Of a stretch of 64,000 nucleotides of DNA, positions 6,518 to 33,534 are shown piece by piece. The DNA is from Octopus sinensis. Taxonomy: Eukaryota. Position numbers and translations under genes: made by a program. The notes under the pieces are model-generated. The model saw only the letters and a list, made by a program, of their open reading frames with translations. It had not been told where the DNA came from and ran no database searches. Location: positions 178,932,001 to 178,996,000 of the forward strand of contig NC_042998.1 in NCBI RefSeq assembly GCF_006345805.1, written 5' to 3'. The stretch's first letter is position 1, and each line of letters starts with the position of its first letter.

Positions 6518-6881
6518 CTATGGGAAAAACAAGGGCTTTTTGACATCAAATTTTGTAGTGCTTCTATCTTGATATATTTCATAAGGATCATCTGGAAAAT
6601 ATCTTTTCTTCAGCCAGTGACGAGAAACCATTCTCTCTAATTTCTTAGATTGAGTCTTGTTGCAAAAAACTGTTTCTTGGAGCCTGAAAACACGTCTACT
6701 ATTTTTAGCCCAACGTTTATTACTTCGACCAGATCTTGCTCTAATCCAAAGTCCAGATCTCAAGCGATAAAATCGACTTACTACAGCTGAACTAGATTTT
6801 GGTCTTCCTTTTTTATAGCTACAAACTATTTTATTTCGAACGCTTGTGACATTAGGTGTCTGCGGAGCACTCAGTAGTTTT
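6518..6881 (-). CDS. MRPL35: MRPL35 coding exon 3 (L35 domain, stop)
   Basis: Acceptor ttttatcttcttcCAG|; contains the ORF-track peptide 6518..6763, extended upstream in frame; ends with TAG. Confidence 0.95.
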
Positions 6882-9422: not shown

Positions 9423-12400
9423 TATACATATATACATACATGGAGTTTGTTGAGGCAGGTCTTCTATGCCCAGATGCCCTCCCTGTTGCAAAAGTTCACC
9501 AGTTTACGAGTAAGGTGATATTTCTCCATGGTCAGGCTATGGTTCCATGGGATGTTGGAAACAAAGAACACAGTTTCTATGACAATATTTTTTGTATGTG
9601 TTAGAAAACAAAGACTCGCAAATGAGAAATGTTTGCCATGTGCAAATGTTTCCTATCTGCATGGCTGTGTAGTTTAAAAGCATCCTTTGCAACCACATAA
9701 TGGACAGTATCTTGGATGTTTTCAACTAAAGCCCCATTCTGACCAATGCCTTGTGAGTGAAGAGAAATGGAAACTATATGGAAGTCTGTTGTACATATAT
9801 GAAATTTTTTGTGTCTTTGCGCTTGTCTCTTACCACCACTTAAAAACCAGTGTTGGTTTGTTTACATCAACATAACTAAGTGGTCTGAGAAAAGAGACTT
9901 TTAAAATAAGGACCAGATTTTAAAATAGCTACTCGAGCCAATTTGACTGAACCCTTCAAGGAGGTACCCCAGCATGGCTGCAATCTGATGAGTGAAACAA
10001 GTAAAAGATAACACCTTAACCATATATATAAGCAATAAAAACAACTGAAGTTGATTTAGTACATCAAAAAGTATGTAAACCATGAAAATAATTGGAATTC
10101 ATTCTAATTCCTTAAACCATTTATCTGTTGAACCATTCAGCTGTGTCAAAGCAACCTCTTATTTTTTATTTATTAATCAAAATGGCCCTGCTTCACAAAA
10201 TAATCCCCCCAAAAAACTACAGATGCAATATAAACATTTAGAGATATGACATACTTACTGATTTAATCCATTGCAGCCTATATATCTGTGGATTTGTGTT
10301 GGTTGGCAGACAGAGACAAATGATCTGAGAGGCATAAGTGATTTTTGGTTGTTGAATCGATGCAAAAGTAGTGGTTTTGATGACACAGAAGAAATTATGC
10401 TTGGTAAAGATGCAGGTGAATACACAGATTTTGCCACATATTGAGTAGCAGCAGATAAAACTAAAAATAAAAAAAAAAGTAATGATTAAAAATAAAATAT
10501 ATTTAATGCAAATAGCATATTGTTTAGTAGATAACTTGTAAGTCATGACAATCCGGCAATTACAAATATTTTGTTCATAGTGATAAAGTCTTTTGCATGT
10601 CACCTCATTTTTTGTGTAAAAATATTCGAGCGAGGTCATTGCCAGTACCGCCTGACTGGCCCCCGTGCTGGTGGCACGTAAAAAGCACCCACTACACTCT
10701 CGGAGTGGTTGGCGTTAGGAAGGGCATCCATCTGTAGAAACTCTGCCAGATCGAGATTGGAGCCTGGTGCAGCCATCTGGTTTACCAGCCCTCAGTCAAA
10801 ATCGTCCAACCCATGCTAGCATGGAAAGCGAACGTTAAACGATGATGATGAACAATGATCCAATTTCAGAATTCCAATTGTTGCCTATATATATTTAGAT
10901 TATTAGTGCTGATATTTGGGTATCATCTTTATCTCATTGGGCAAAATGCTTAGCAGCATTTTATCTTTCCTTATGTTCTGAGTTCAAATTCCACCAAGGT
11001 CGGGTTTGCCTTTCATTCTTTTGGGGTTAATAAAATAAGTACCAGTTGAGACCATGGAATTGATGTAATCAACTTACTCCCTCCCTGAAACTGCTGGCCT
11101 TGTGCTAAAATTTGATACTGATATTTGGATGTTATCTGCAAGAAAGTCTTACTGAGAGGAGGTAATTACTTCAGGAAAGACATTTATTTATAAGACAAAT
11201 ATCATGAGTGATAACACATGTTACTCTGCATAGTACAAGGGTAACTGTTGATTTACCCATAACATTCTGCCACTTAACTAAGTGTCCCTCTATACTAATT
11301 TTGTATTGCTGATTCTGTAGTGCTTACAGTGGCCAAAACTTTTGCAGATATCAAAACCTATTTACATCTATGCCGACTTTCATCCAAAGTTTTATTTGTT
11401 AGTTCTTATAATGCTGTTAAATGTTGAGATTCACACAAATGTCAGCTGCTAGTTATTACTAACAGGCAAAAACCAAACAAAGACGGTTTTGAACTGAGAA
11501 TTGTGAGACACCAGTCTAGATCCAAGAAAGTATTAAGTCCTGCATTTTACTATCACGTGCATCATGGCTGTGTGGTTAAGAAGTTTGCTTTGCAACCATG
11601 TGCTTTTGGGTTTTCCTTTAGTGCACTTCCTATTCTGTCTCATATTAACATTGTATCAGGACCCCATATCTCTTTCTCCCCCTCACTTTTCAGGTGGACA
11701 AGTTATATATTTACCTCTTCAGTGACACCCTGGGGCAAATGTATTCTTGGTCAACATGGTCTCCCAATCTACTAGAAATAGCATCCAAATCTCCCCGAAC
11801 AATATTTAACCATTTTAAAAAGTGACGCAGAAGGTACGCTATGTCTGCAAAACAAGGAATGTATATATCATAATCATCATTTAACGTCCATTGTCCATGC
11901 TGGCATGGGTTGGACAGTCTGAGATAGAGCTAGCATGCTGCACCAGATGCCAGTCTGATTTGGCATGGTTTTCTATGGCTGGATGCCCTTCCTAATGCCA
12001 ACCACTCTGAGAGTGTAATGGTTGCTTTTATGTGCCACCAGCACGTGCGCAATTTGCCTAACACAGGGGTGTGTTTACATGCCACTGGCATCTGCCATGA
12101 CTGAGATTTTGCTTGATGGGTCTTCTTCTCAAGCACAACAATGCCAAAGGTATCGTTTCCCATTCAAACTGCTTCAGCCTTTGGAGTGTCATCCTCGCTG
12201 TATGTGGCCAAACATTATCCTGATGGAAGAATACCTTTCATCTTGAAACCAAAGAAAGTTGTTTTTCTTCTAGCACTGACTTAAGCTGCTCACAGTAGAT
12301 TTCCTTTATTATCGTATGGTTTGGGTTTAAAAGTTGAAAGAGGACTAAGCCTTTCATGTCACACCAAACCTTATGTAGGTGAAGACCTTCTTTAGCCTGG

Positions 12401-13611
12401 GGTGCCAGTGTTTCTCCTTTCCCTACCCACTGTCTTTGGCACTTGACATTTTTATAGAGAACCCATTTCTCGTCACCTATCACTATTCAGTCCAAAAAGG
12501 TTCATTCGTGAGAAGAGCAAAGATTCACTCACTGCGTGAGATTAGACATGAAAAGTTTGTGAGGAACCCATTGACTCAATTTGCTGACTTTTCCAATGGC
12601 ACACAGGTGTCGATGAATGATTGAATGACCAAATCCAAACTTCTCTGCTACTTCCTCAGCAGTTACGATGGGATCTTGTTCCAGCAGGGTTTGCAGGACG
12701 TGCTCGTCGAGCCCTACAGATCTTCTGGGAAGAGGCTCGTCGTCTAGGCTGTAGTTTCCGACTCGGAATTTCTGGAACCACCCTTGACACTGGCTTAAGC
12801 TTATGATCCGATCCCCATATACTGCGTTAATGTTCCTCGTACTTTCCGTTGCCTTTATTGAACTCATAAAGCAAAATATGCTCCTTTGTCACTTCCATTA
12901 TAGCGTTAAAAAAAACAAAAAAAAAAAACTGATAAAATCGAACTGCACTCTTCTAAACTTACCCTAAAAATAAGTCCAAGGTAAAATTACTACCTGCTTT
13001 TATAGCAAGTTGATGCAGGTAGTTTATCCTGTCCCCCTCCAACTTTTAGTTCAAGCAATTGAAAAAAGACGTATTATTTATGAGATGACCCAACATATAA
13101 AAGACAGGTACATCAGGCTAGATTACCACTGAGCACAGCCAGCTTGGGATTTAAAGAACATAGGGATGAAACAAGGACGTTTAAATAGCTTGTTTTGTGC
13201 TATATAAATTTTAGAAACATTCTACCTTTGAGTCACAACAAAACTGTGATCTATAGTTTATGCTTCGTGATTTTATTTCACATTCTTATTGAACTTCAGG
13301 AATTACTACTGTTGTGTAAACCTAAAAGAACAGACATAACCAACGAAGCTGCTTTGTATATGTGTGTAATAGCAACTATTTACTACACTGTTAACTTTGA
13401 TCTTTATATAATGACATCTAGCATAATTGCATTAACGAACTGGTTGATTGCAATACATATTTAGAGTGTCGACAGTATAAAAAGCATTGTTCGTACTCTA
13501 TCGTATCAGTCTGTTTGAGTGACAACAATTTAAAACAGAAATAAGAAATGTCCACCAAAAGAATTCCCAATAAAAAGACTCACCTTTGATGCCCTGCCGT
13601 AGACAAGCCAT
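6518..13611 (-). CDS. MRPL35: Mitochondrial ribosomal protein L35 (bL35m), 3 coding exons: 13611-13584, 10460-10259, 6881-6518; 594 nt, 197 aa
   Basis: The spliced ORF reads MACLRQGIKVLSAATQYVAKS...VRNKIVCSYKKGRPKSSSAVVSRFYRLRSGLWIRARSGRSNKRWAK...VFCNKTQSKKLERMVSRHWLKKRYFPDDPYEIYQDR. The FCNKTQSK and DDPY motifs and the basic core match metazoan MRPL35. Both introns are GT-AG with matching phases (1, 2). Confidence 0.95.
7400..8200 (-). mobile_element. Degenerate RTE LINE fragment (RT C-terminus)
   Basis: ORF 7458..7670 (WYGHVMHMNEDSCIKR...RPRQVWNEVV) is homologous to 1125-1541. Confidence 0.85.
8370..8870 (+). mobile_element. Degenerate RTE LINE fragment, inverted relative to 7400-8200
   Basis: Same RT C-terminal sequence family (gaaagaaatga, gtagacctaggaa). 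Confidence 0.75.
10259..10460 (-). CDS. MRPL35: MRPL35 coding exon 2 (presequence-like region)
   Basis: Acceptor ttttattttTAG|, donor CA|GTAAGT; S/L/R-rich, acid-poor peptide; phases 1 and 2 fit the flanking exons. Confidence 0.9.
12150..13096 (-). mobile_element. Decayed mariner transposon (3' end lost) in MRPL35 intron 1
   Basis: ORF 12529..12867 has an HTH and WVPHKL; ORF 12238..12483 has GDEKWVLYKN; HQDNVWPH near 12200; one TIR-like end near 13065-13096. Confidence 0.88.
13584..13611 (-). CDS. MRPL35: MRPL35 coding exon 1 (MACLRQGIK + G)
   Basis: ATG at 13611-13609; donor AAAG|GTGAGT; phase 1 matches the exon 2 acceptor. Confidence 0.85.
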
Positions 13612-13708
13612 TGCAATAACGTGCTTCTGAGCAGGTTCAAGGAGAACAACTCCCGACTTCCGGTTTTCTATCCATGTCGCTTCCTGTCGGTGGCTTGTTA
13701 GCAGCGCA
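13612..13708. promoter_or_regulatory. Putative compact bidirectional promoter / 5' UTR region shared by MRPL35 and IMMT
   Basis: 97 bp between divergent ATGs; locally GC/CpG-richer than the flanks; ACTTCCGG (13656-13663) and GCTTCCTGT (13679-13687) are ETS-type motifs. TSSs cannot be located from sequence. Confidence 0.7.
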
Positions 13709-13747
13709 ATGTGGAAATCAAGTCGGGGTGTTTCAGCAAGATTAAGG
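13709..13747 (+). CDS. IMMT: IMMT exon 1 (MWKSSRGVSARLR)
   Basis: ATG-initiated R/S-rich presequence start; donor AGG|GTAGGA in phase 0, as exon 2 requires (exon 2 has no ATG). Confidence 0.8.
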
Positions 13748-16700: not shown

Positions 16701-19700
16701 CAAACCAACGCCGCTTGTCAAGCATTGGTGGGTGAGTGGCAAGCACACACACACACATACATGTATGAAGATCATATAGTTATATATTTTTCATCATCAT
16801 CATCATCACTATTTAACGTCCGCTTTCCATGGTAGCATGGGTTGGACGATTTTGACTGAGGGCTGGTGAACCAGATGGCTGCACCAGGATCCAATCTTGA
16901 TTTGGGATAGTTTCTACAACTGGATGCCCTTCCTAACGCCAACCACTCCGAGAGTGTAGTGGGTGCTTTTTACATGCCACCAGCACATGGGGCAGTCAAG
17001 CGGTACTGGCAACGACCTAGCTCGAATCCTTTTACTCATGCCCCCAGCACAGGTGCCAGTAAGGCGACATCTACCAAATTCACTCACTAAGTCCAGGACT
17101 ATAATAGAAGATAATTGCCCAGGGTGCTGTATAGTGGGACTGAACCTGAAACCATGCCGTCATCTATATATCTTTAGAATATTGAGAATTTTTGACTTAC
17201 AAACCTTTTCTGCATTGGTATGTCATGAAAGTTTGGAGAATCTTATATGTTTTTGTTACATGGACAAGTTTCGTATTTCTGTTTCATAACTTAAAACCAT
17301 GAGCACTTGTTTTTGTAAATTTTTGAATTTGATACAGTTTAACTTCTGGCCTTTGTAGGAATAACTGCATCTATTTATTAGCATGCTTTTTTCTGCTAGA
17401 AACACAGAAAAAAAATGCTAATTTTTCAAAAATGTTTATACCTTTCATTGTCCATTTGAAATTCAATTTTTTATCAGTTTCTTCATCTGTTTGTATTTCA
17501 TATAACGTTTGTAGTATTCATTACTTAGCCAAATCTTTCATCTTATAGTAGGAAGTCTCTTTTATTTTTGTGTTATTTAAATTTCAGCGCTGTTGTGTTG
17601 CTAAGTACCAGCAGGCCTTAATACACTCAAGAAGAAAGCTGTCAACACAAGCTCCAGGTTCTGGATCCGCTTTGAAGTGAGTTCAGATTTCATCCTTTAA
17701 AATGGAATATTTTCAAATCAGTCATAATATAGTAATTATGTGCTGTATATTGAACTGTAATTAGTTTGAATATTTAAGTAGTTTTCTTCACAACCATATA
17801 GTTGGTAGAAACAAAATCTATGGCAGCCTGTGTGTGTGTGTGTTTTTGCATCTGTGTTGAAGAGAATAATGTTATAGCTTGCAACTAAACTACTCTCAGC
17901 TATATTTCTCTGTTAAGTAATAAATATATGAATAACATACTATAAATATTAGAGTAAATTCATTCAAGACTCATAAAGCATCAATCTTTTCCTTTTAATT
18001 CCATGTGTTTGATGTCTCACTTCACTACCATCTATTAATTTTATTCTGTCTTATTCTTTAAACTTTAGATATTTAAATCTTTCTGAAACTTCTTCCTCAC
18101 GTACACTTCTAACTTTTGACTTGTAATAATTCAGTCTGATTATCAACCACCACCTGTGCTGGTGGCACGTAAAAAGCACCCACTACACTCACGGAGTGGT
18201 TGGTGTTAGGAAGGGCATCCGGCTGTAGAAACACTGCCAGATCAGACTGGAGACTGGTGCAGCCTCCTGGCTTCCCAGACCCCGGTCAAACCGTCCGTTA
18301 AACGATGATGATGATTAACTTTACTCATTTGCCATATATTCTAGTCTTTGACCAACCAGGTGAAGCCTCAGAAAATAATTTATCAATAGATGACAAATTC
18401 TGGCATGGTTAACTTTGTATATATTTGAAGGCCAACTTCTAATCAATCCGTCCTAGCTGAGATGTTTGTAAAACGCTGTAACTTCAAGTTATATTATTTT
18501 TTATTTATTTATCTACCAAAATTACTGTGCCATTTATTGTTAATTTTACATGAAGTTTCAGAGGTTTAAATTACTTTTTAAATAAAACCCTATCATTTTG
18601 CTTACCATAACACTTGTTTTTATTTCTTTTTACAGACTTGGTAAATGGATCTTAGGGACTGGCTTAACAGGTTTCACTGGTGTCGTTGGTTATGCTTGGT
18701 ATGATCCTTCGGTGAAGAATGCTATTGAACAAAACATTCCCTATTCCAAAGAGGCCTTGAAACCAATCTTTGATGTGTTGCCTGAAAAAGTTACTCTTCC
18801 TACACTGCCTCCCCATATAAAGCAGTAGTGTGTATACTTATTGTTTCTTCTCCATTCTTTATTTTTTTGTTTATTAAATCTTTGTTTTTAATTAGTGTTA
18901 TGTAATTGAGTACTGCATTGTTATTTTTGAATTGTGGTGAAACTATCAACTAAAATTTATGTTAAAAAATGTTCATAATTTCTGTAAATGTAATAAAAAT
19001 TTGGTAATATTTGTTCACTTGTTTGTTGTTGTTGTTAGCTTGAGCTCTAGAGCAGTAATTCAACTAATTTATATCTACTGGCAACGAAAAGAAAAAATGT
19101 CTCATAAAAATGCTATTTAACTCTAGAGTCATTAGAATTGATGAGATGTAAATTTCTCTTAAGATAGGACGTCAATGTCTTTCAGATTTTCAAAATTGAT
19201 GGGTGAACTAAGTGCCCTGTCCAGTACTATCAATATATATTTTATTATGGTTACAGCTTTGTTCATCTTCATATCTGAATTTTTTAGTTTGCCATGGTCA
19301 ACAACAGAAGAACCGGCACCACAAGAAGCCCCAAAACCTGTGAAAAAGGTAAGGGTTTACTTATATTATTTTGTTTTTGTTTATCATTTTGCAGGCACCC
19401 TTAAAGTATCAAGAATGCAACATCTAGCTGTAGATAGCTCTTGAATTACAGTATTTACAAAATAAAGTGTTTCTTGTCCTGTTATTTTCAGAAGTGTTTA
19501 GTTAACTGCAAAGCAATTATGTATTCAGTGCTTTGGATCATTGTTTAGTGTCAAATCAGGTTTCTTTTTCTTTTTATGAGTAACCCTCTACAGCTTCCAA
19601 AAGCCAGTGTCAAATTATTGCTGTCAAATTAAGCTGATGTTTTGTTACCATCTTTGGTAGAGTTAATAACAGATACTTCAAGAACTCTCAGTTGTCACCA

Positions 19701-20502
19701 TGAGAAATATTTTTATTTGTATCATCATTATTTAATGTCCATTTTTCCATGCTTGAGTGAATCAGACAGAATTTGTTGAGGCAGGTTTTTGGTGGTTGGT
19801 TGCCCTTCCTGTCACCAACTCTCACTTGTTTCCAAGCAAGGTGATATTTTCCCATAGCTACACATGTTTTTCACAGAAGACTGGAAATGAATAACCTTGC
19901 TTGTATGATAGTCATGCTCATTTACAACCCTCATGTGATATCTAGTCATGGGTACCCACAAACACATACACACATGGTTTCTTTCAGTTTCCATCTACCA
20001 AATCCACTCACAGGCTTTTCTATAATAGAAGACACTTGCTCAAGGTGCTGTGCAGTGGGATTCTTCTCAACCACACAGCTGTCATTGTGTATAGTGCCTA
20101 AACAAACTGAAAATTTTAATAGGTTCATTGAGAACTGAAATGTTGTCTAAGCCTAAATCTTCAAAGACATATAATTGAACAGTGTTTATTATAATCTCTC
20201 ATCCACACTTTTAATAATAGTAAAATGTCATCTGATACTTTAAACATTACCCTTCTTAAGGAATTAAACATTTCATTAGATAACTTGTTTACAGCTCAGA
20301 ATATACTTTTACTTGTTTCAGTCATTTGACTCTGGCCATGATGGAGCACCGCATTTAGTCAAGCAAGTCGACCCCAGGACTTATTTGTAAGCCTGGTACT
20401 TATTCTGTCGGTCTCTTTTGCCGAACCACAATGTTATGGGGACGTAAACACACCAGCATCGGTTGTCAAGCGATGTTGGGGGACATACACACACACATAT
20501 AC

Positions 20503-20558
<56 letters not shown>

Positions 20559-20572
20559 ATATTTATCATAAG

Positions 20573-20604
<32 letters not shown>

Positions 20605-23600
20605 GACGGGCTTCTTTCAGTTTCCGTGTACCAAATCCACTCACAAGGCTTTGGTTGGCCCGAGGCTATAGTAGAAAACACTTGCCCAAGGTGCCACGCA
20701 GTGGGACTGAACCTGGAACCATGTGGTTCGTAAGCAAGCTACTTACCACACAGCCACTCCTACACCTATGTTCAGAACTTTTGCAGAATCACACCAATTC
20801 ATGTTTCCAAATATTTAGAATGGTTTTGGCTGGCTGTGTGGTAAGAAGCTTACTTCTCAGCCACATGTTTCTGTGTCCAGTTCCACTGCATGGCACTTTG
20901 GGCAAGTCATCATCATCATCATCATCCTTCTACTATAACCCTGGTCTGAACATAGTCTTGTGAGTGGATTTGGTAGATGGTAAATTGAAGTAAGCTCATC
21001 ATATATATATGTGTGTGTATGTGTGCATCTCTTTGTATATGTCCCCGTAACTTAGTGGTTTGGCAAACGAGATTGTTAGAATAATTACCAGGCTTTAAAA
21101 AAAAAAGTACTGGGGTCTATTTGACTGAAAAACCCTTCAAGGCAGTGCCCCAGTATGGCCACAGTTCGATGATTGAAACAAGTAAAAGATAAATGTTGAA
21201 GCAGCTCTCCTGCAAAAATAACTGCTTTATATTTATTTATTCATTTAAAGTTCAGTGGAATATATGTTGGTTTTGAACTAGAGGCATTTTTTTCCCCTTC
21301 AGGTCCCTAAATTACCTGATCCTGAAGAAATAAAGAGAAAAGGTAAGTGCATTGATTTATTGATCTTAAGTAACCAATATGTTTAGCAATAGTTTGGAAC
21401 ATTTGGTAGAGCAACTGACAAAGTACCACGTAGTATTTAGTTATGTCTTATTATCTGAGTTCAAATACTGGCAGTTGGCTAACTGTTGTATTCCCAAAAG
21501 GCTGACAATGATTAATCATCATCATCATCATTTAACATCCTTTTTCCATGTTGGCACTTGTTAGATGGTTTGACTTGAGCTGGTAAGCTGGAGAGCCGTA
21601 CCAGGGTCCAGTCCTCTATTTTAGCTTGGTTTCTACAGGTGGGTGCCCTTCCTAATGCCAACCACTCTACACAGTGTACTGGGTGTCTTTTACATGCCAC
21701 CAGCAAGGAGGCCCTTTTATGTGTCACCAGCACTAGCTAAAAGACAGTTTACTTGTAAGCTCCGTGTATTGCTGAAGTATACCTTGGAGGACTTGAAGTC
21801 TTGTGGCTTGACTTAAGAATTCAGGCAAGAATGGGCAAGAATTAGTGCTTTAGCTGACCCTCCCCACATCATCATCATCGTTTAACGTTCGCTTTCCATG
21901 CTAGCATTGGTTGGACGATTTTGACTGAGGGCTGGCAAACTAGATGGCTCCATCAGGCTCCAATCTTGATTTGGCAGAGTTTCTACAGCTGGATGCCCTT
22001 CCTAACGCCATAATATTATTTAATATCTATTAATATTAACAATGAAACTAAATATTATTAGAATAGTAAAGATGTTAATCATTGATATATATTTATCAGT
22101 GTTGTATTCTCATGACTTTCAGAAGCTGCCGAGAAAAAGTTAGCAATGGCTAAAAAGGCCGAAGAAGAAAAGAGATTAGAAGCTGAAAAACTATCAAAGA
22201 AGAAGAAGACAGAGGCAGAAAAACACGAAGAAAAAACTTTGGAAACTGCCAGACAGAAAGCTGAAGTGGAACGTCAGTTGAAGGAGAAACAAGCTGTAGA
22301 GGCTGCAGAAAATGAAGGTACAGTTATTTTTCTCTTCCATATTTTTTTTCCCCGTAGCCGAATTGTTAACAATTACCAGAAACACATAACTATACGACCA
22401 AGGGACATAACTCATGCTATCTACGCTAAAAGCTTAGTGTCTCAGTACATGGTAGAATGAGATAAACCAACCCAATGTATTATAATACATATGCAGTGAT
22501 CGGAACTCAGTCATCATCATCATTTAACGTCCGCTTTCCATGCTAGCATGGGTTGGACGGTTCAACTTGGGTCTGTGAAGCTGGAAGGCTGCATCAGGCC
22601 CAGTCTGATCTGGCAGTGTTTCTACGGCTGGATGCCCTTCCTAACGCCAACCACTCCGTGAGTGTAGTGGGTGCTTTTTACGTGCCACCCGCACAGGAGC
22701 CAGACGGAGCTGGCAAACAGCCACGGACGGATGGTGCTTTTTATGTGCCACCGGCACGGGGGCCAGGCAAGGCTGGCAACGGCCATGATCAGATGGTGCT
22801 TTTTACGTGCCACCGGCACGGGGGCCAGGTGATTATTTTAATTTGATCAGTAATTAATTTACCAAATATTTTCTAGCACTTTAGATAAATTTATTTTACT
22901 GTATCCTTGGGTTGATTAATAAATGTGCGTGCGTGTGTGTGTTTATTTGTGTGTATGGGGGTGTGTGTGGTTCCATAACTACAGATCTGTAAAATAAGTA
23001 TGGGACTTGAATAAGTTCTAGGGTCGATAAGATTGACTAAAACGTTTGAAAGCAGTGCCTCCAGATGTTTGCAGCCTAATAACTAATACCAGTAAAAGAA
23101 TAGATACATACACTTGTATATACATAAACATAAATACATGTACATTAGGTATATACTGTGAATATACACTCCATGTACATACTAGACTTCCCCATCCATG
23201 ATACTGCTTGTATTACTGACAATAATTTACAGCTATCACATGATGTAAAGACAAGGTGACACAAACATATGCATACTCACACACGTACCGTAAATCCTCG
23301 AGTATAATCTGCATTTTTCCCCCAAAATTTAAAGGTCAAAATCCTTAATGCGGTTAACGAGGTTAAAAATGAAAAATATTTTCTAAGCAATGTCCGAGTC
23401 TCTATTTGCTGTCCGGCAATGTTTATTCAGATGCATTTTGTGAAGTCAGGCAGGAAAATACCTTAAGCTAAGCCTGAAAGCAATGAAGTCATAAAAGAAA
23501 CATCCATAACTTGCAGTAAGCAACATTTATTAAACGTTATTACTATTATTTCTTTATTTTCTGCAAACAAAATGCACAAAAAAGCTACACGTTTGCATTA

Positions 23601-25838
23601 TGTTATATATACAATAATAATAAAGGACATTACCGTGTACATTTTTACAAACCAAGGATGTAAAAATGACTTGACTCAAGTTAGAGAAGGTGTGTGTATT
23701 ATACACAAGGTTTAGGTTTTTCAGAGCTACAGCCCCCTAAAGATCCCCTGCGTATTATACTCAAGGATTTACGGTATATACATGTATACATGCTTATGTA
23801 CTGGTGCCATGTAAAAAGCACCTGCGCTGGTGCCTTGTAAAAAGCACCCACTACACTCTGTAAAGTAGTTGGTGTTAGGAAGGGCATCCAACTGTAGAAA
23901 CTAGCCAAAACAGACAATTGGTGCCTGGTGCAGCGGTCTGGCTTGCCAGCTTCTGTCAAAATGTCCAACCCATGTCATTATAGAAGGCAGATGTTAAATG
24001 ATGTTGATCATCATATTCATAGTCGTTTAACGTTCCTTTTCCATGCTCGCATGTGTTGGATGGTTTGACTGAGGACTAGCAAGCCGGGAGGCTGCACCAG
24101 TCTCCAATATGATTTGGCAAGGTTTCTACACATTGATGCCCTTCCTAACACCAACCACTTGGAGAATGTAGTGGGTGCTTTCTATGTGCCACCGGTATGG
24201 GTGCCAGTCAGGCGGCACTGGCACCAGTCACGCTTGAATGGTCTTTTTACATGCTACCGGCATGGGATACTTCTTTCAGTTTCTGCCTACCAAATCCACT
24301 TACTAGGCTTTGGTAAGTTTGGAGCTTTGGTAGAAGACACTTGTGCAATATATATGGATATATACACATGCATACAGCCATATGCACACACACACACACA
24401 CACACACATGTAAGAGAGAACATGATGGAAGTCTGCTTATATCTGACAGACTAATGTCCTACATTTTAGAAAAGTTACAGTAGACGGGTGTATCTCTGTG
24501 TAAATGTTTGAAATATTTGACATTTTTTATTGTATACTCTCTACTCTATTTTAATATTTTTAGTCTATAATTGCTTATATTTTCATCATTATTTTTGGTT
24601 AACATTTGGCCAACCAAAGTCTTGTGAGTGGATTTGGTAGATGGAAGTTGATGATTGTTTGTGTTTCCCTGTTTTGATAGCAGTTGTGAATGTGTGTCAC
24701 TGTTATACAAGCTGTATTTATTTTCAGTATTCTGCACAACATGTCTAGACATGGGGGAAATATTACCTTGCTTAGGAACAGGTGTGGGTTGGCAACAGGA
24801 AGGGCATCTGGCTATAGAAAATTTGTGTAGGCATGGGAAAATGAACACTAAAATGAATTTTTATTCTTTTACTTGTTTCAGTCATTTGACTGTGGCCATG
24901 CTGGAGCACTGCTTTTAGTCGAACAACATGACTCCAGGACTCATTCTTTGTAAGCCTAGGTCTCTTTTGCCAAACCACTAAGTTATGGGGACATGAACAC
25001 ACCAACATCGGTTGTCACGTGATGTTGGGGGAACAACATAGACACATAGGGGTTGATAAAATCAGTACTATTTGGGTACCCCCTCCCCTGAAATTACTGG
25101 CCTTATGCCAAAATTTGAAATCATTATTATTGTTATTATTCAAATTGATAACAGGGCAGCAAGCTGGCAGAATCATTAGCATGCGGGGCAAATGCTTAGC
25201 GATATTTTGTCTGTCACGATGTTCTGAGTTCAAATTCCTCTGAGGTCAACTTTGCTTTTCATTCTTTTGGGATCAATTAAACAAGTATCTATTACGCATT
25301 TAGGTTTGGTGTAATCGACTTAACCCCTTCCCCCAAATTTGAACCCTTGTGCTTCCAGTAGAAAGAATTATTAAGGTTGGTATCTGTGTCTCAGGTAGTA
25401 GAATACAGCACTAAGTACATTACTGTATTTGTTTTAATCTCCCTTAATCTCTATATGATCTCATGTCAAATCATCATAATCTACTTTTTCATGCTTGCAT
25501 GGGTCAGGTGGAGTTTATTGAAATAGATTTTCTATGGCTGAATGCCCTTCCTGTCATCAACCCTAATATCTTCCCATGGCCTGACATGTTTTTACAGAAT
25601 ATGGAAAATGAACGACATCCATTTACATATATATATATATATATATATATACGTGCAGGTGGCACGTAAAAAGCACCTACTACACTCACGGAGTGGTTGG
25701 CGTTAGGAAGGGCATCCAGCTGTAGAAACATTGCCAGATAAGACTGGAGCCTGGTGCAGCCTTCTGGCTTCCCAGATCCCCGGTCGAACCGTCCAACCCA
25801 TGCTAGCATGGAGAACGGACGTTAAACGATGATGATGA

Positions 25839-25876
<38 letters not shown>

Positions 25877-28800
25877 TCTGGATGGTATTAAATCCATTGT
25901 ATTCCTCTCCTTCAAATTCATGGTTTTGCACCACTGTAACAGCCTATCATTATATAATTCCATTTCTTTTTTTCCTCAGCTCTTGTACTCATAGTTACCA
26001 CGGCAATGAAGAATGCTAAGGAGGCAGCAGCCAGAGCAAATGAATCTATGGGAAAAAGAGTGGAAGCAGTAAAGCAACATGCCAAATTCCTCAAGAATGC
26101 AATGGAGGATGCTTCAGCAGTATGCTAACCAGTTTTTTATTTAAATTCTTCCAACTCATCATGTCTACCATTGGCTTTTTATTAATGCTTGTCACTTCTT
26201 CCATTAATTAGCTTTTCTCTTAATTTCATCTTTCTTGCTTTATTGTTTTTTTTTCTTTTAATTTCTTTCCATTTTTCTTTTTTACTTTTCTTTTGCTGTC
26301 TTTTCCTTCTTTCCTTTTTCTTTCCATACCATTTCCTTACTTATTCATGTTTTCTCCAATAATTTAAACTAAAATTATTCACATTAACTTCATGTTTAAT
26401 TATCTCAATCCCCCAGTCTTGTAAATATTAAAAAAGCACTGGTGATGTATACAGCTATGTAAAAACACTGGTGATGGTGCCAAGTAAGAAGCACCCAGTA
26501 AATATTCTGTAAAAACATATCAGGCCATGGGAAAATATTGTCTTGCTTGGAAACAGGTAAGGGTTGATGACACGAAGGGCATTCGGCCATAGAAAATCTA
26601 TCTCAATAAAATCCACTTGACCCATGCAAGCATGAAAAAATAGATGATGATTTGACATCAGAATATATAGAACTCAGTAAAGTGGTTGGCATTAGGGAGG
26701 GCATCCAGCCATAGTAAACATGCCAGAGCAAACACTGGTTTGGCCCCTGACCTTACCAGCTCCTGTCAAACCATCCAACCAATGCCAGCATGGGAAAATG
26801 GATGTTAAATGATGTGAATGATGGTTAGTTGTAAGTTACTTCTAATAAGATATTTGCAGTTATATTGAGTACATATTTTATAGTGTATTAATAATTAATT
26901 TTCTTTTTCTTTTTTTTTTTTTCAATTATTTAAGGTAGACTAGGAGATTTATGTCGGGGGTTGAATACATCTCCACCTACTCTCTTCATTTTGTAAGCTC
27001 TCACCTACATTTGAGTATCAATATTTTGGAATTCTAAGGCAGCGAGCTGGCAGAAACGTTAGTACACAGTGAAATGCTTAGCGGTATTTCGCCTATCTTT
27101 ACATTCTGAGTTCAAATTCTGCCAGGGTCGATTTTGCCTTTCATCCTTTCGTGCTCGATAAATTAAGTACCAGTTGCGTACTGAGGTCGATCTAATCGAC
27201 TGGCCCCCTCCCCAAACATTTTGGACCTCAATTCTGTAAGGTGGCAAGCTGGCAGAATTGTTAGCATACCAAGCAAAATGCCTAGCAGTATTTCATCCAA
27301 CTTCACATTCTGAGTTCAAATTCTGTGGAGGCTGACTTTGCTTTTCATCCTTTGGGGGAGGTGAGTCAATAAAATTAGTACCGGTTGAACACTGGGGTTG
27401 ATGTAATAGACTTACACCTGCCTCTGGAATTGCTGGCCTTGTGTTAAAATTTGAAATCAATATTTTGAAATTCTCTTAAAGTAGTATTATCTTCATCAGG
27501 TATAGCAATATCAATCGATTTAAATTGAATTTGAGTCACTATATTTCATTTCATTGTGCACCAAATTCTCAAGTCATATCTATAAAGTGTTCATACTGGA
27601 TTATGCCAGCATGGAAAACCATCGTTAAATGATGATGATTATTATTATTATTATTATGGCAGTATGACAGAAAATTGGAAAGTTACTTTATCAGCTTATT
27701 TTCATTTCTGGTTGTAGCTAGCTTAGTTGATTAATATCTAGGATGAATTTCAATATGTATCTCCTTCTTAAAAGTCCTTAATATATTTTATGGAAGCCAG
27801 TGCCGCCTCGACTGGCTTCCATAAAATACACCAATCCGACCGTGGCCGATGCCAGCCTCGCCTGGCACCAGTGCAGGTGGCACGTAAAAAGCACCCACTA
27901 CACTCACGGAGTGGTTGGCGTTAGGAAGGGCATCCAGCTGTAGAAACGTTGCCAGATAAGACCGGAGCCTGGTGCAGCCTTCTGGCTTCCCAGATCCCCG
28001 GTCGAACCGTCCAACCCATGCTAGCATGGAGAACGGACGTTAAACGATGATGATGATGATGATATTGGGAATAATGTGTGTTGAAAAAATATGAAAGAGG
28101 CTAAGCAGTTTAATTTTTGTACTATTTTTTTGCTTGTAAAGGTTTTGGAGAAAGACAGTCAGTGGCAAGCTGTAGCCAGTGCATATGAGATACGTCAAGC
28201 TGTCACAAATGAATGTGATAAGAAGGTGATGAATGCCAGGTAAATGTCATTGTTTTATGTTTCAAAACTTCTACAGTAGTCATGTTAGTGCAGAGGTAAG
28301 AGTGTTCAATCTAATGCATAAGTGTAATGAGCTCAAAATCTGTAGCTCTGTGGCTCAAATCATGCAAAAATTGACTTAACTTTTCCTCTTTCTTAGGTTC
28401 ATGTGATTACACACACACACACATGAGAGAGAGAAAGGCTTCTTTCAGTCTCCATCTACTAAATGTACTCACAAGGCAGTAAAGAATGCAAGAGAAATAC
28501 CTAGCCAAAGATAAACCTCTGTACCTGGCTTTTGTTGACACGGAGAAAACCTTTGACAGGGTCCCCCCTATCCCTTATCTGGTGGTCAATGTGGAAACTA
28601 GGTATAGATGAGTGGTTAGTGAGAGCTGTACAAGCCCTGTACAGGGATGCTGTCAATAAGGCGAGGCAGTGAAGAATGTTGTGAAGAGAAAAGGGAGGAG
28701 ATGCTGGGTCATCTGCTGAGGAGAGAATGACATAAGTTGTTGTTTGAAGTAACAGTTTGTGTGGATCATATGTTTGTGTACAAACTGTCAATATAGTCTC

Positions 28801-31800
28801 TGGTTAACGAACGAACAGTTAGATCTAGAAGTGAAATCACTTCAAAAGAATAAATCATGCTTCCATTCTTGATGGTTTGGTGGTAGGAAGCGTATATATC
28901 AACAGTGGTAAAACTCCAATTTGTGAGTTGTATGCAACTCTCAAAGCTGATATCTGCAGCTCCTGAGATTTACATCCTACCAGCTGGATTTTGAAGTATT
29001 AACTGAAAAAAAATGAAAATTCAGTAAGTCTTCAATATGCAGAGATAAATCAATTCAGCTTGGTCAATAAAACTATGTAAGAGTGTATTTTCTTGTTTTA
29101 AATATGATTTTACATATATGTGGCACATAAAAGAGCACCACCCGTGGCACATAAAAGGGCACCATTTGAGCGTGATCATTACCAATGTCGCTTCACTGGC
29201 ACGTGTAAAAAGATTCGAGTGAGGTTGTTGCCAGTGCCGTCTGACTGGCCCCCGTGCTGGTGGCATGTAAAAAGCACACACTACACTCTCAGAGTGGTTG
29301 GCGTTAGGAAGGGCATGGAAAGCAGATGTTAAACGATGATGTAACTTTTGAAATAAAATGAAACAAAAAAAAACATAGGCACAGGTGTGGCTGTTTGGTA
29401 AGAAGCTAGCTGGCAGAAACGTTAGCACGCCGGGCGAAATGCTTAGCAGTATTTCGTTTGCTGTTACGTTTTGAGTTCAAATTCCGCCGAGGTCGACTTT
29501 GCCTTTCATCCTTTCAGGGTCGATAAATTAAGTACCAGTTACGCACTGGGGTCGATGTAATCAACTTAATCCCTTTGTCTGTCCTTGTTTGTCCCCTCTA
29601 TGTTTAGCCCCTAGTGGGCAATAAAGAAATAAGAAGTTAGCTTCCCAACCACATGGTTCTGGCTTCAGTCCCACTGTGTGGCACCATAGGTAAGTGTTTT
29701 CTCCTTGGGCTGACCAAAGCCTTGTGACTGGATTTGGTAGATGGAAACTGAAAGAAGCCCTTTCATATATCTATGTGTGTGTGTGTCTGCTTGACCCCCA
29801 CCATCACTCAGGTCCCTATGACATAGCAGTTCGACAAAAGAGACTGATAGAAAAGGATCAAGCTTTAAAGGAAAAGAACTGGGGTTGACTCATTTGATTA
29901 AAAATTCTTCTAGGTGGTGCTCCAGAATGGTTGCAGTCTCACAACTGAAACAAGTTAATGATAAAAGATATATGTGACTAAATAACTGTGTTATCATTTC
30001 CAATACACAGCAGTGTCTTTAATAGAGAATTTTGACTGATGTCTTCTTGAATATTTTTCACTTTAAATTTCAGATTACAATTAGAAAAACTTCGTAAAAC
30101 ATTAGATGATGGTTTTGGTAACACTGCTACCAAACACAATGCACTATTGATTGATGGACAGGAGTTATTTAATAATATTTCACACAGCTTGAATATATCT
30201 TCAAGTGAGGTAAGATCCGCTTTCTTTTTTTCTATTCATTTCTCTTTTTCTGTCATCATCATCATCATACGTCTGTTTTCCATGCCGAAGTGGTTCCAAC
30301 AAAAAATTAAAACTGGCTCATAGTTTTGGTTCAATGGGAGTTTTCTTCTACACTACACAGATTGATCAGTCGTCAGGCATGTGGGAAACAGAACTGTGCA
30401 GTAGGAAAACAGATGTTTGTTTCTAATTTCTATTTTCTATGCTTGCATGGATTGGTTGGAAACCATTGAGGCAGATTTTCTATGGCTGGACGCCCTTGAC
30501 AAGAACCCTTACCTGTTTCCAAACACACATTTCCATACGTATATACATATACATCATGATGATATACATATATATATATACAATTGAAGTCGAAATCAAA
30601 TTCGATGACTGGCATCTGTGCTAATGGAGCGCTAAGAGAACCATATGAGTGAGATCGGGGCCAGAGCAACAAGCTGACCTCCGAGCTGATGGCACGTTAA
30701 AATTACTATTCGAGTGTGATCGTTACCTGCATTGCCTACTAGCACTTGTGCTGGTGGCACGTGAAAAAACATTCGAGCGAGGTCATTGCCGGTGCCGCTG
30801 GACTGGCTATTGTGCAGGTGGCACATAAAAAGCACCGTTTGAGCTTGGCCGTTGCCAGTACCGCCTGACTGGCCCTTGTACCAGTGGCACGTAAAAGCAT
30901 CCACTACACTCTCGGAATGGTTGGCGTTAGGAAGGGCATCCAGCTGTAGAAACTCTGCCTGATCAGATTGGAATCTGGTGCAGCCATCTGGTTCGCCAGA
31001 CCTCAGTCAAATTGTCCAACCCATGCTAGCATGGGAAACGGGCGTTAAACGACGATGATGATATATTTTTTTATTCATATATATATACACACACAGTGTG
31101 TGGGAGAGAATCATGATGTCATAGGAGAGAAATGTGTCTGCATGGATGATGGCTCACTTGCATTTAATGAAGCTGCTAAGAGAGAGGCTTGGAGACGCCA
31201 CTATGAAAGGTTGCTAAATGAAGAGAATGAATAGGTGAAAGAGAGTCTGCCAAATGTCGACCCAACAAAGGGACCAGCTATCTGAATTGACAGTATCTTG
31301 ATAGATAAAGCAATTAAAGGTATGAAGACAAGGAAAGCCCACAGTCCATCAAGAATCACCACAAAGATGCTTAAAATTTCTGGTGGTGTCGGCTATAGTC
31401 TAGTCACCTGAATGAGTCATACCCAATGACTAGTGTAGTAGCACCATAGTCAACTACTACAAAGGTAAAGGAGATGCATTAGATGCAAATACTTACAGAG
31501 GTATCAAGTTGTTGGATCAGGTAATGAAAGTCACGTAGAAGGTCATAGCTCAACTAATTAGAGAGAGAGTTAGTTTGGATGAGATGCAGTTTGGGTTTGT
31601 GCCAGGGAATACCACCACCGATGCTATATTTCTGGTAAGACAGCTGCAAGAGAAATACCTAGCCAAAGATAAACCTCTGTACCTGGCTTTTGTTGACATG
31701 GAGAAAACCTTTGACAGGGTCCCCCCGATCCCTTATCTGGTGGTCAATGCGGAAACTAGGGATAGATGAGTTGTTAGTGAGAGCTGTACAAGTCCTGTAC

Positions 31801-33493: not shown

Positions 33494-33534
<41 letters not shown>

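What the first reader, a model, noticed from the sequence alone, without database searches (positions are those of the whole stretch)
13584..13747. MRPL35 and IMMT head-to-head with only 97 bp between start codons
Seen: the MRPL35 ATG is at 13611 (-) and the best IMMT ATG is at 13709 (+), in a genome region where introns span kilobases and are full of transposons; no repeat interrupts this interval. Established: human IMMT and MRPL35 are also divergent neighbours on 2p11.2, a few kb apart. Inference: this is an ancient bilaterian microsyntenic pair kept by a shared promoter that co-regulates cristae organisation and mitochondrial translation. The spacing is so tight that the 5' UTRs must be very short or overlap as sense/antisense.
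Basis: partly seen in the sequence, partly recalled or inferred. Interest (0 to 1): 0.7.

Follow-up and report, generated by a model that had tools for sequence, protein, structure and literature searches.

The report
Octopus IMMT–MRPL35 head-to-head gene pair
Two nuclear genes for mitochondrial proteins (MIC60/IMMT and ribosomal protein bL35m/MRPL35) start back-to-back only 97 bases apart in this octopus sequence; the pairing is old, being shared with other molluscs, an annelid and mammals, and the gap looks like an ordinary compact two-way promoter rather than a new kind of element.

Summary
The window is Octopus sinensis. MRPL35 starts at ATG 13611 (-), and its first coding exon is 13611..13584. 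IMMT/MIC60 starts at ATG 13709 (+), and its first coding exon is 13709..13747, spliced to 17588. The repeat-free spacer is 97 bp (13612-13708).

Both starts are backed by homologue N-termini, by frame-preserving conservation in Argonauta, and by independent annotations of four cephalopod genomes.

The head-to-head pairing is also found in:
- O. vulgaris and O. bimaculoides (97 bp)
- Argonauta (95 bp)
- Haliotis (322 bp)
- Solemya (about 8.3 kb)
- Capitella (under 3.4 kb)

Human and cattle have the same two neighbours according to published gene lists. The pairing was not found within 10 kb in a spider or a cyprinid fish.

The spacer is GC- and CpG-rich. It carries the only CCGGAAG (ETS/GABP-type) site in 64 kb, exactly at its midpoint, plus a second ETS-like site. 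Both are invariant across octopods. Haliotis likewise has its only CCGGAAG in the spacer.

The best reading is a compact, TATA-less, ETS-type bidirectional promoter inside an ancient microsyntenic pair. That is a new example of a well-known kind, like HSPD1-HSPE1. Start sites, co-regulation, and whether the shared promoter is what holds the pair together remain untested.

The parts
13584..13611 (-). MRPL35 (bL35m) coding exon 1. ATG at 13611 encodes MACLRQGIK plus 1 nt, followed by a GTGAGT donor at 13583.
   Evidence: Read. The model equals XP_029656059.1. O. vulgaris and O. bimaculoides have the same N-terminus, and Argonauta has a related one, MAC(F)R.
10259..10460 (-). MRPL35 coding exon 2.
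   Evidence: tblastn with O. vulgaris bL35m gives 96% identity. AG/GT boundaries were found.
6518..6881 (-). MRPL35 coding exon 3 with the L35 domain and the stop codon.
   Evidence: tblastn at 97% identity. Pfam PF01632 matches at E = 1.9e-10.
13612..13708 (.). 97-bp spacer between the two start codons. It is the candidate bidirectional core promoter: GC 0.515 and CpG observed/expected 0.93, against 0.383 and 0.37 for the whole window. It has no TATA box and no repeat.
   Evidence: Identity between O. sinensis and Argonauta is 78% here, against 50-68% in the flanking intron ends.
13656..13664 (-). Canonical ETS/GABP-type site ACCGGAAGT. Its TTCC core (13658-13661) spans the spacer midpoint at 13660.
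   Evidence: CCGGAAG occurs only once in the 64-kb window. It is invariant in four cephalopods. It is also the only copy in each of loci L001, L002, L009 and Haliotis L003, and always lies in the spacer.
13678..13687 (-). Second ETS-like site ACAGGAAGCG, 23 bp from the first and in the same orientation.
   Evidence: It is unique in the window, with 0.03 copies expected by chance. It sits inside a 31-nt block that is invariant across the four cephalopods except for one position. Haliotis also has a second GGAA site, ACAGGAAGT, 20 bp from its CCGGAAGT.
13626..13645 (-). Conserved pyrimidine block TCTCCTTGAA (13645..13636) and an initiator-like CTCA(G/C)A (13631..13626). This is a possible MRPL35 start site about 17 nt before the ATG.
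   Evidence: The columns are invariant in alignment A3. The initiator assignment is inference only.
13674..13745 (+). Out-of-frame upstream ATG with a 23-codon uORF that overlaps the IMMT start. Its context is weak (T at -3).
   Evidence: It is present in the three Octopus species but absent in Argonauta.
13709..13747 (+). IMMT/MIC60 coding exon 1 (39 nt, MWKSSRGVSARLR, phase 0), followed by a GTAGGA donor at 13748.
   Evidence: Mollusc and annelid MIC60 all begin MW[KR][AS].. in a short first coding exon: 39 nt in Capitella, and 42 nt in Haliotis and Solemya. Argonauta differs by one synonymous change. The annotated CDS starts at this ATG in O. vulgaris, O. bimaculoides and Argonauta.
17588..17676 (+). 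IMMT coding exon 2 (89 nt), with a tttcag acceptor and a GTGAGT donor.
   Evidence: It is conserved without indels, with the same boundaries and an open frame, in O. vulgaris, O. bimaculoides and Argonauta.
18636..41886 (+). Rest of the IMMT coding region. Exon 3 starts at 18636 and the last exon is 41267-41886 including the stop codon. The exon 3/4 junction is unresolved.
   Evidence: tblastn with Haliotis and Solemya MIC60. Splice search. Pfam PF09731 matches at E = 4e-109.

Best explanation
Shown:
- The window (Octopus sinensis) carries MRPL35 (bL35m, minus strand) and IMMT/MIC60 (plus strand) head to head, with start codons 97 bp apart.
- Both first coding exons are genuine.
- The arrangement is inherited. 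It is present in other octopods at 95-97 bp, in a gastropod at 322 bp, in a bivalve and an annelid at kilobase spacing, and in mammals as direct neighbours.

Inferred mechanism:
- The 97-bp spacer is a compact, TATA-less, CpG-rich bidirectional promoter.
- An ETS-family factor of the GABP/NRF-2 type binds the central ACCGGAAGT site and the neighbouring ACAGGAAGCG site and recruits the transcription machinery in both directions.
- This gives MRPL35 a 5' UTR of roughly 15-45 nt and IMMT one of roughly 20-45 nt, or transcripts that overlap slightly at their 5' ends.
- Both housekeeping mitochondrial genes would then respond to the same input.

Why the pair persists: a breakpoint in such a short shared control region would damage at least one essential gene, which would help preserve the pair in lineages where the spacing is tight. 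In lineages with kilobase spacing, the pairing may persist mostly by inertia.
For: Gene models:
- Searches give the exons. One search shows an exact match of the MRPL35 model to XP_029656059.1. One search gives the Pfam matches.
- The family-wide MW[KR][AS] start appears.
- Exon 2 is conserved with frame and splice sites intact in Argonauta.
- No other upstream ATG exon fits. The six mechanical candidates all lie in repeats.

Synteny:
- O. vulgaris 97 bp; O. bimaculoides 97 bp; Argonauta 86 bp to the annotated ATG and 95 bp to the homologous ATG.
- Haliotis 322 bp; Solemya 8256 bp; Capitella head to head.
- Human order IMMT / MIR4779 / MRPL35 and the same neighbours in cattle.

Promoter:
- The spacer has GC 0.515 and CpG observed/expected 0.93, against 0.383 and 0.37 for the window.
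- The single CCGGAAG in 64 kb lies at the exact midpoint. About 1.5 copies are expected in 64 kb, so about 0.002 in 97 bp.
- The second site is unique, with 0.03 expected.
- Both sites are invariant in four cephalopods. Spacer identity to Argonauta (78%) exceeds that of the flanking intron ends.
- Haliotis independently has its only CCGGAAG in 31 kb inside its spacer, next to a second GGAA site. Solemya has CCGGAAATGGAAG about 50 bp upstream of its IMMT ATG.

Precedent: GABP binds more than 80% of human divergent promoters, and adding a consensus site confers bidirectional activity (PMC2077898). Conserved 5'-5' pairs with short spacers are a recognised class of microsynteny, for example HSPD1-HSPE1 (PMC3514665).
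Against: - No transcription start sites, RNA-seq or expression data were available, so sharing of the promoter and co-regulation are inferred from sequence only.
- ETS motif matches are not binding data.
- The pair stays adjacent at about 8.3 kb in Solemya and about 4 kb in human (from memory). It is not found within 10 kb in Nephila or in the fish Culter alburnus. A shared core promoter is therefore neither necessary for adjacency nor impossible to lose.
- The cephalopods compared are related, so part of the spacer conservation reflects shared ancestry.
- The O. bimaculoides RefSeq model that reads through the spacer hints that transcripts may overlap rather than start inside the 97 bp.
Confidence: 0.7

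Rival explanations
1. There are two separate core promoters that merely abut. Each gene has its own elements packed into the short gap. The adjacency survived by neutral inertia, because a tiny intergenic target is rarely hit by rearrangements, and not because of selection on shared regulation.
For: - Adjacency persists with kilobase spacing in Solemya, possibly in Capitella, and in human (order, spacing from memory).
- It has been lost within 10 kb in a spider and a cyprinid fish.
- In Haliotis both ETS sites sit 50-75 bp from the IMMT ATG and about 250 bp from the MRPL35 ATG, which has its own YY1-like GCCATCTT at the start codon.
Against: - In octopods a 97-bp spacer leaves no room for two independent promoters without shared elements.
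- The strongest motif is exactly central, and the spacing has been held at 95-97 bp across Octopus and Argonauta.
- Adjacency of the same two genes in the same orientation in distant phyla is very unlikely by chance.
Confidence: 0.2
2. The 5' ends overlap. One or both genes start beyond the partner's start codon, so the first exons are transcribed on both strands as a sense/antisense pair and the 97 bp is transcribed rather than being a pure promoter.
For: - The current O. bimaculoides RefSeq model XP_014773688.2 (282 aa) enters from an acceptor in IMMT intron 1 and reads in frame through antisense IMMT exon 1 and the spacer into MRPL35.
- The minus-strand frame is open from 13773 to 13612.
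- The first 113 nt of IMMT intron 1 are fairly conserved between O. sinensis and Argonauta, at 68% identity.
Against: - That model starts in an exon antisense to the last IMMT exon 21 kb away, which looks like a prediction artefact or a minor antisense RNA.
- The earlier O. bimaculoides version and the O. sinensis, O. vulgaris and Argonauta models use the short form.
- An open frame of 54 codons in 50% GC sequence is not unusual; I estimate a chance of about 0.08.
Confidence: 0.1

Closest known systems
HSPD1-HSPE1 (HSP60/HSP10) head-to-head pair with a bidirectional promoter
   Same: Both are pairs of nuclear genes for mitochondrial housekeeping proteins in 5'-5' orientation. Both have a very short spacer and are conserved across animal phyla with occasional lineage losses. 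The comparison rests on the description in PMC3514665.
   Different: The HSPD1-HSPE1 products form one functional complex, and that pair extends to unicellular holozoans and fungi. MIC60 and bL35m act in different machines (cristae junctions and the mitoribosome). Here the pairing is shown only for lophotrochozoans and mammals. The spacing is under 1 kb only in cephalopods and Haliotis among the species examined.
GABP/ETS-driven bidirectional promoters of vertebrates (Collins et al. 2007, PMC2077898)
   Same: Both have a CpG-rich, TATA-less short divergent spacer with a strict consensus CCGGAAGT site. Here there are two GGAA sites 23 bp apart, centrally placed.
   Different: Binding and bidirectional activity are demonstrated in human cells. 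In the octopus only the motif, its position and its conservation are shown. The identity of the ETS factor in molluscs is unknown.
Conserved ancestral microsyntenic pairs (CAMPs; Irimia et al. 2012, PMC3514665)
   Same: Non-paralogous neighbours are retained across phyla. The 5'-5' orientation and the short intergenic distance fit the paper's 'coregulation' class.
   Different: I could not check whether IMMT-MRPL35 is in their list, because no supplement is held. No bystander or developmental enhancer logic is involved here.

Membership tests
Bidirectional (divergent) promoter gene pair | Two genes on opposite strands in head-to-head orientation | tested here: met
   MRPL35 is on the minus strand and IMMT on the plus strand, with first coding exons facing away from each other.
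Bidirectional (divergent) promoter gene pair | Transcription start sites less than 1 kb apart | not testable with these tools
   The start codons are 97 bp apart, which makes this very likely. No CAGE, 5'RACE or transcript data could be reached. Non-coding upstream exons are not excluded.
Bidirectional (divergent) promoter gene pair | CpG-rich, TATA-less spacer | tested here: met
   GC is 0.515 and CpG observed/expected is 0.93, against 0.383 and 0.37 for the window. There is no TATAAA in the spacer.
Bidirectional (divergent) promoter gene pair | Shared cis elements that drive both directions, and co-expression of the two genes | not testable with these tools
   This needs reporter assays and expression data. 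Only the central, conserved ETS motifs were shown.
GABP/ETS-type promoter | Consensus CCGGAAGT site or sites in the core promoter, conserved in relatives | tested here: met
   The site at 13656-13664 is the only copy in 64 kb. It is invariant in four cephalopods. Haliotis independently has its only copy in the spacer.
GABP/ETS-type promoter | Occupancy by an ETS factor | not testable with these tools
   No ChIP or binding data exist for the octopus.
Conserved ancestral microsyntenic pair | Orthologues adjacent in several phyla on both sides of the protostome-deuterostome split | tested here: met
   Molluscs in three classes and an annelid show it. Human and cattle neighbours come from published gene lists. 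It was not found within 10 kb in Nephila or Culter.
Conserved ancestral microsyntenic pair | Orientation conserved | tested here: inconclusive
   The orientation is 5'-5' in all seven lophotrochozoan genomes. The human orientation (IMMT minus, MRPL35 plus) is from my memory and not from a tool.
MIC60 / Mitofilin (PF09731) | Full-length match to the Mitofilin profile above the curated threshold | tested here: met
   366.6 bits against a cut-off of 27.4, covering profile positions 6-613 of 614. Identity to mollusc MIC60 is 55-59% in the C-terminal part.
bL35m / Ribosomal_L35p (PF01632) | L35 domain above the curated threshold, with mitochondrial orthologues | tested here: met
   41.5 bits against a cut-off of 28.9. 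The protein is identical to the O. sinensis protein named 39S ribosomal protein L35, mitochondrial.

The most novel reading that the evidence does not exclude
The 97-bp octopod spacer is a minimal bidirectional promoter centred on an ETS site, and this shared control region is the actual constraint that has held IMMT and MRPL35 together since at least the bilaterian ancestor. If so, the GABP/NRF-2-style coupling of mitochondrial biogenesis genes through divergent promoters predates vertebrates, and this spacer would be a natural sub-100-bp model for studying it.
Probability: 0.3. Interest if true: 0.45.

Novelty: new member of a known kind. Interest (0 to 1): 0.3.

Why it matters
If the inference holds, this is one of the shortest natural two-way promoters linking two mitochondrial housekeeping genes, with its key motif conserved from cephalopods to a gastropod. 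It would add an example outside vertebrates to the rule that ETS/GABP-type sites organise divergent promoters. It would also add another mitochondrial pair to the small set of deeply conserved 5'-5' neighbours such as HSPD1-HSPE1. In practice it gives a clean anchor for annotating both genes in cephalopod genomes, where short first exons are easily missed. It does not change current understanding of promoters or synteny.

Tried and rejected
1. Full-length IMMT model. My best 703-aa and 702-aa models are not in the protein collection. The exon 3/4 junction is ambiguous. The frame that gives PAPQEAPKPVKK, which resembles Haliotis, is phase-incompatible with exon 5. As a result I could not retrieve octopus transcript contigs to see 5' UTRs.

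2. Look-ups that returned nothing or nothing useful:
- Spider P0024, fish P0036 and bivalve P0053 returned nothing.
- Zebrafish P0043 returned only transcript contigs.

3. Capitella MRPL35 exon 1 could not be placed, because of assembly gaps and many mechanical candidates. Only an upper bound on the spacing is given.

4. Literature:
- No paper in the library holds MRPL35, IMMT and 'bidirectional' together.
- Two broader searches that paired the gene names with synteny terms listed no paper holding both gene names.
- The Irimia 2012 supplement is not held.
- The Davila-Lopez 2010 text and its seven supplements have no match for either gene name. They also have none for HSPD1, so they probably use other identifiers and the result is uninformative.

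5. A metagenome scan with an MRPL35 profile gave six short loci, none with mitofilin in the flank. This is uninformative.

6. The sigma-70 promoter/terminator scan is irrelevant to a eukaryote and was ignored.

7. Rfam found no RNA family anywhere in the window.

8. tblastx of the fish PTCD3 region against the window gave no hit, so there is no evidence that the vertebrate PTCD3-IMMT neighbourhood is present here.

9. Only six mechanical ATG...GT candidates are in phase, all lie in repeat copies, and none has the family N-terminus.
Full report
**What is in the sequence**

Reading 13200-14100 shows two short coding first exons facing away from each other.
- On the minus strand, ATG at 13611, then GCTTGTCTACGGCAGGGCATCAAAG, then a GTGAGT donor. 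The coding exon is 13611..13584 and encodes MACLRQGIK.
- On the plus strand, ATG at 13709, 39 nt encoding MWKSSRGVSARLR, then a GTAGGA donor at 13748.

**Gene identity and species**

The long minus-strand ORF at 6521-6979 found bL35m of Octopus vulgaris (97% identity) and Argonauta hians. Their N-termini are MACLRQGIK... and MSAMACFRFGFR....

A splice search gave one consistent three-exon model: 13611..13584, 10460..10259, 6881..6518. Its 197-aa product is identical to XP_029656059.1, '39S ribosomal protein L35, mitochondrial [Octopus sinensis]'. The window is therefore O. sinensis, and my model equals the RefSeq one. It matches Pfam Ribosomal_L35p above threshold.

On the plus strand, tblastn with Haliotis and Solemya MIC60 lays out exons from 18649 to 41886. 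A draft 12-exon model matches Pfam Mitofilin at 4e-109.

**Is 13709 the true IMMT start?**

Several lines agree.
1. Mollusc MIC60 proteins begin MWKASS (Haliotis), MWKATSS (Solemya) and MFKSSTS (Patella). Capitella begins MWRASLSS.
2. The first coding exon has nearly the same size everywhere: 39 nt in octopods and Capitella, and 42 nt in Haliotis and Solemya. Each is followed by a GT donor.
3. Exon 2 (17588-17676: tttcag acceptor, 89 nt, GTGAGT donor) continues the frame from exon 1 in phase 0 and joins exon 3 at 18636 to give ...SALK-LGKWILGTGLTGFTGVVGYAWYDP, the conserved transmembrane/GYAWYD region.
4. In Argonauta, exon 2 is present with identical boundaries, no indels and an open frame despite 20% nucleotide divergence. 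Its exon 1 differs by one synonymous change.
5. The annotated CDS of the mitofilin gene starts at this very ATG in O. vulgaris, O. bimaculoides and Argonauta. I checked the coordinates against alignment A3.
6. Only six other ATG...GT segments in intron 1 could splice in phase to exon 2. All lie in repeat copies and none resembles the family N-terminus.

Both N-termini have the look of mitochondrial presequences. IMMT has 10 K/R and no D/E in its first 43 residues. MRPL35 has 7 K/R and no D/E in its first 57.

Direct RNA evidence was not obtainable.

**Surroundings**

The spacer and the two first exons contain no sequence repeated elsewhere in the window (none between 12048 and 15082) and no tandem repeat.
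- MRPL35 intron 1 (3.1 kb) holds Mos1/mariner remnants (HTH_48 and Transposase_1, 12241-12888) and SINE-like copies present up to 38 times in the window.
- IMMT intron 1 (3.8 kb) is similarly loaded.
- No Rfam family is present anywhere in the window.

**Conservation of the pairing**

I used the contig look-up, which reports CDS coordinates. Distances are between start codons.

| Species | Distance |
|---|---|
| O. vulgaris | 97 bp |
| O. bimaculoides | 97 bp |
| Argonauta hians | 86 bp to the annotated ATG; 95 bp to the ATG homologous to the Octopus one |
| Haliotis asinina | 322 bp |
| Solemya velum | 8256 bp |
| Capitella teleta | Head to head; MRPL35 main exon at L005 4999..4502, IMMT ATG at 8374. 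MRPL35 first exon unresolved because of assembly gaps, so under about 3.4 kb |

All seven are 5'-5'.

For mammals, a published table of the human 2p11.2 interval lists PTCD3 / SNORD94 / IMMT / MIR4779 / MRPL35 / REEP1 in order (PMC10742694). A cattle interval lists REEP1, MRPL35, IMMT, PTCD3 (PMC12075139). That the human genes are divergent and about 4 kb apart is my recollection, not a tool result.

Two negative results:
- In the spider Nephila pilipes, no gene is called and no bL35m similarity is found within 10 kb upstream of mitofilin.
- In the cyprinid Culter alburnus, the upstream neighbour is a RING-finger gene. The downstream, convergent neighbour is PTCD3, as in human.

Chance adjacency of the same two genes in the same orientation in molluscs, an annelid and mammals is very unlikely. 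Inheritance from the protostome-deuterostome ancestor, with later losses, is the parsimonious reading. Older origins (cnidarians, sponges) were not tested.

**The spacer as a promoter**

Composition stands out. GC is 0.515 and CpG observed/expected is 0.93 in the spacer, against 0.383 and 0.37 for the whole window and about 0.30 GC in the flanks. There is no TATA box.

On the MRPL35-sense strand the spacer reads:

TGCGCTGCTAACAAGCCACCG**ACAGGAAGCG**ACATGGATAGAAA**ACCGGAAGT**CGGGAGTTGT**TCTCCTTGAA**CCTG**CTCAGA**AGCACGTTATTGCA-ATG

Motif evidence:
- CCGGAAG, the core of the ETS class I/GABP consensus, occurs once in 64 kb, at 13657-13663. Its TTCC core spans 13660, the exact midpoint of the spacer.
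- With about 1.5 copies expected in 64 kb, the chance of one falling in a given 97 bp is about 0.002.
- A second ETS-like site, CAGGAAGCG, is also unique, with 0.03 expected. It lies 23 bp away in the same orientation.

Conservation in the four-cephalopod alignment:
- A 31-nt block next to the IMMT ATG, which includes the second site, is invariant across the four species except for one position.
- The AACCGGAAG site, TCTCCTTGAA and an initiator-like CTCA are invariant.
- A 12-nt patch between the two sites, and the 4 nt after the first site, are free to vary.
- Identity between O. sinensis and Argonauta is 78% in the spacer, 50-68% in the adjacent intron ends, and 64% in MRPL35 exon 1.

Independent support from other molluscs:
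- The only CCGGAAG in the 31-kb Haliotis locus lies in its 322-bp spacer, 72 bp before the IMMT ATG. An inverted ACAGGAAGT lies 20 bp away.
- Solemya has CCGGAAATGGAAG about 50 bp before its IMMT ATG.
- Each of the three other cephalopod loci also has its single CCGGAAG in the spacer.

In human cells, GABP occupies most divergent promoters, and inserting a consensus site confers activity in the second direction (PMC2077898). This is the closest mechanistic precedent.

**Consequences for the 5' UTRs**

If the start sites lie outside the ETS pair, as is usual, then:
- MRPL35 would start between about 13655 and 13612. The conserved CTCA at 13628 would give a 17-nt leader.
- IMMT would start between about 13665 and 13708.

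An out-of-frame ATG at 13674 opens a 23-codon uORF that ends at 13745. It has a poor context (T at -3) and is absent in Argonauta. It is therefore either upstream of the start site or tolerated by leaky scanning. Both main ATGs have G at -3.

**A complication**

The current O. bimaculoides RefSeq protein for this gene (XP_014773688.2, 282 aa) is 5'-extended.
- It begins in an exon antisense to the last IMMT exon.
- It splices about 21 kb to an acceptor in IMMT intron 1.
- It then reads in frame through antisense IMMT exon 1 and the spacer into MRPL35.

The corresponding minus-strand frame is also open in the window, from 13773 to 13612. This may be an antisense transcript or a prediction artefact. 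It keeps alive the possibility that the 5' ends overlap.

**Comparison with what is known**

Conserved 5'-5' neighbours with short spacers and co-expression are a described class. The mitochondrial chaperonin pair HSPD1-HSPE1 is the textbook case, and it too has been lost in some lineages (PMC3514665).

IMMT-MRPL35 fits that class. It differs in three ways:
- Its products work in different complexes.
- The spacing is under 1 kb only in cephalopods and Haliotis among the species examined.
- The depth of conservation has been shown only for lophotrochozoans and mammals.

I found no paper in the library that describes this pair. The supplementary lists that might contain it were not available or not searchable by gene name.

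**Verdict**

The regulatory part is plausible and gains motif-level support, but it is untested. In particular, the claim that the shared promoter is what keeps the genes together is weakened by the lineages with kilobase spacing and by the two losses. This is a tidy new example of a known kind of arrangement, not a new kind of system.

Noticed in passing
L009 10001-10102 and 31341-31522 (O. bimaculoides); window equivalent 13612-13773 (-): RefSeq model XP_014773688.2 (282 aa) for O. bimaculoides MRPL35 starts in an exon antisense to the last IMMT exon. It splices about 21 kb into IMMT intron 1 and reads in frame through antisense IMMT exon 1 and the spacer. The same minus-strand frame is open in the window. 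It could be an antisense transcript or a prediction artefact.
   Followed up: partly
window 13674-13745 (+): An out-of-frame upstream ATG with a 23-codon uORF overlaps the IMMT start codon. It is present in the three Octopus species and absent in Argonauta, and its context is weak.
   Followed up: partly
window 18780-19350 and 22123 (+): The IMMT exon 3/4 junction is ambiguous. The frame that encodes PAPQEAPKPVKK, similar to Haliotis PAPQSAPKPAPK, cannot join exon 5 in phase. The only phase-consistent model uses a weak donor at 18790 and the other frame. My 702-aa and 703-aa models are not in the protein collection. An unseen small exon or alternative splicing is possible.
   Followed up: partly
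window 12241-12888 (-): Remnants of a Mos1/mariner transposase (HTH_48 and Transposase_1), broken into separate ORFs, lie inside MRPL35 intron 1, about 700 bp from exon 1.
   Followed up: yes
window 10613-10859, 11858-12047, 15319-15500, 16549-17156 and many others: A short interspersed repeat is present in up to 38 copies in the 64-kb window. Its translations recur as ...LDALPNANHS.... It fills the introns of both genes but stops well short of the promoter.
   Followed up: partly
window 31539-31766 (+), 696-1538 (+), 51248-52276 (+): There is a weak, sub-threshold reverse-transcriptase match (RVT_1) at 31539-31766 in an IMMT intron. At 696-1115, near the 5' end of the window, there are only weak PHD/C1 zinc-finger matches. 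A Tc1-like DDE_3 transposase remnant lies downstream of IMMT.
   Followed up: partly
window 61900-62450: A long purine-rich, low-complexity stretch is open in several frames as E/K/R/G repeats (GC skew 0.55). It is probably a simple repeat rather than a gene.
   Followed up: no
L010 (Culter alburnus) 1071-6955, 10001-24357, 26671-34357: The cyprinid fish keeps the IMMT-PTCD3 tail-to-tail neighbourhood seen in human but has a RING-finger gene where MRPL35 would be. No PTCD3 similarity was found in the octopus window downstream of IMMT.
   Followed up: partly
L003 9668-9680 (Haliotis asinina): The Haliotis MRPL35 start codon sits inside a YY1-like motif (GCGGCCATCTTG, that is CAAGATGGCCGC on the coding strand). 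In vertebrates this arrangement is associated with very short 5' UTRs. The octopus equivalent (GCAATGGCT) is only a partial match.
   Followed up: no
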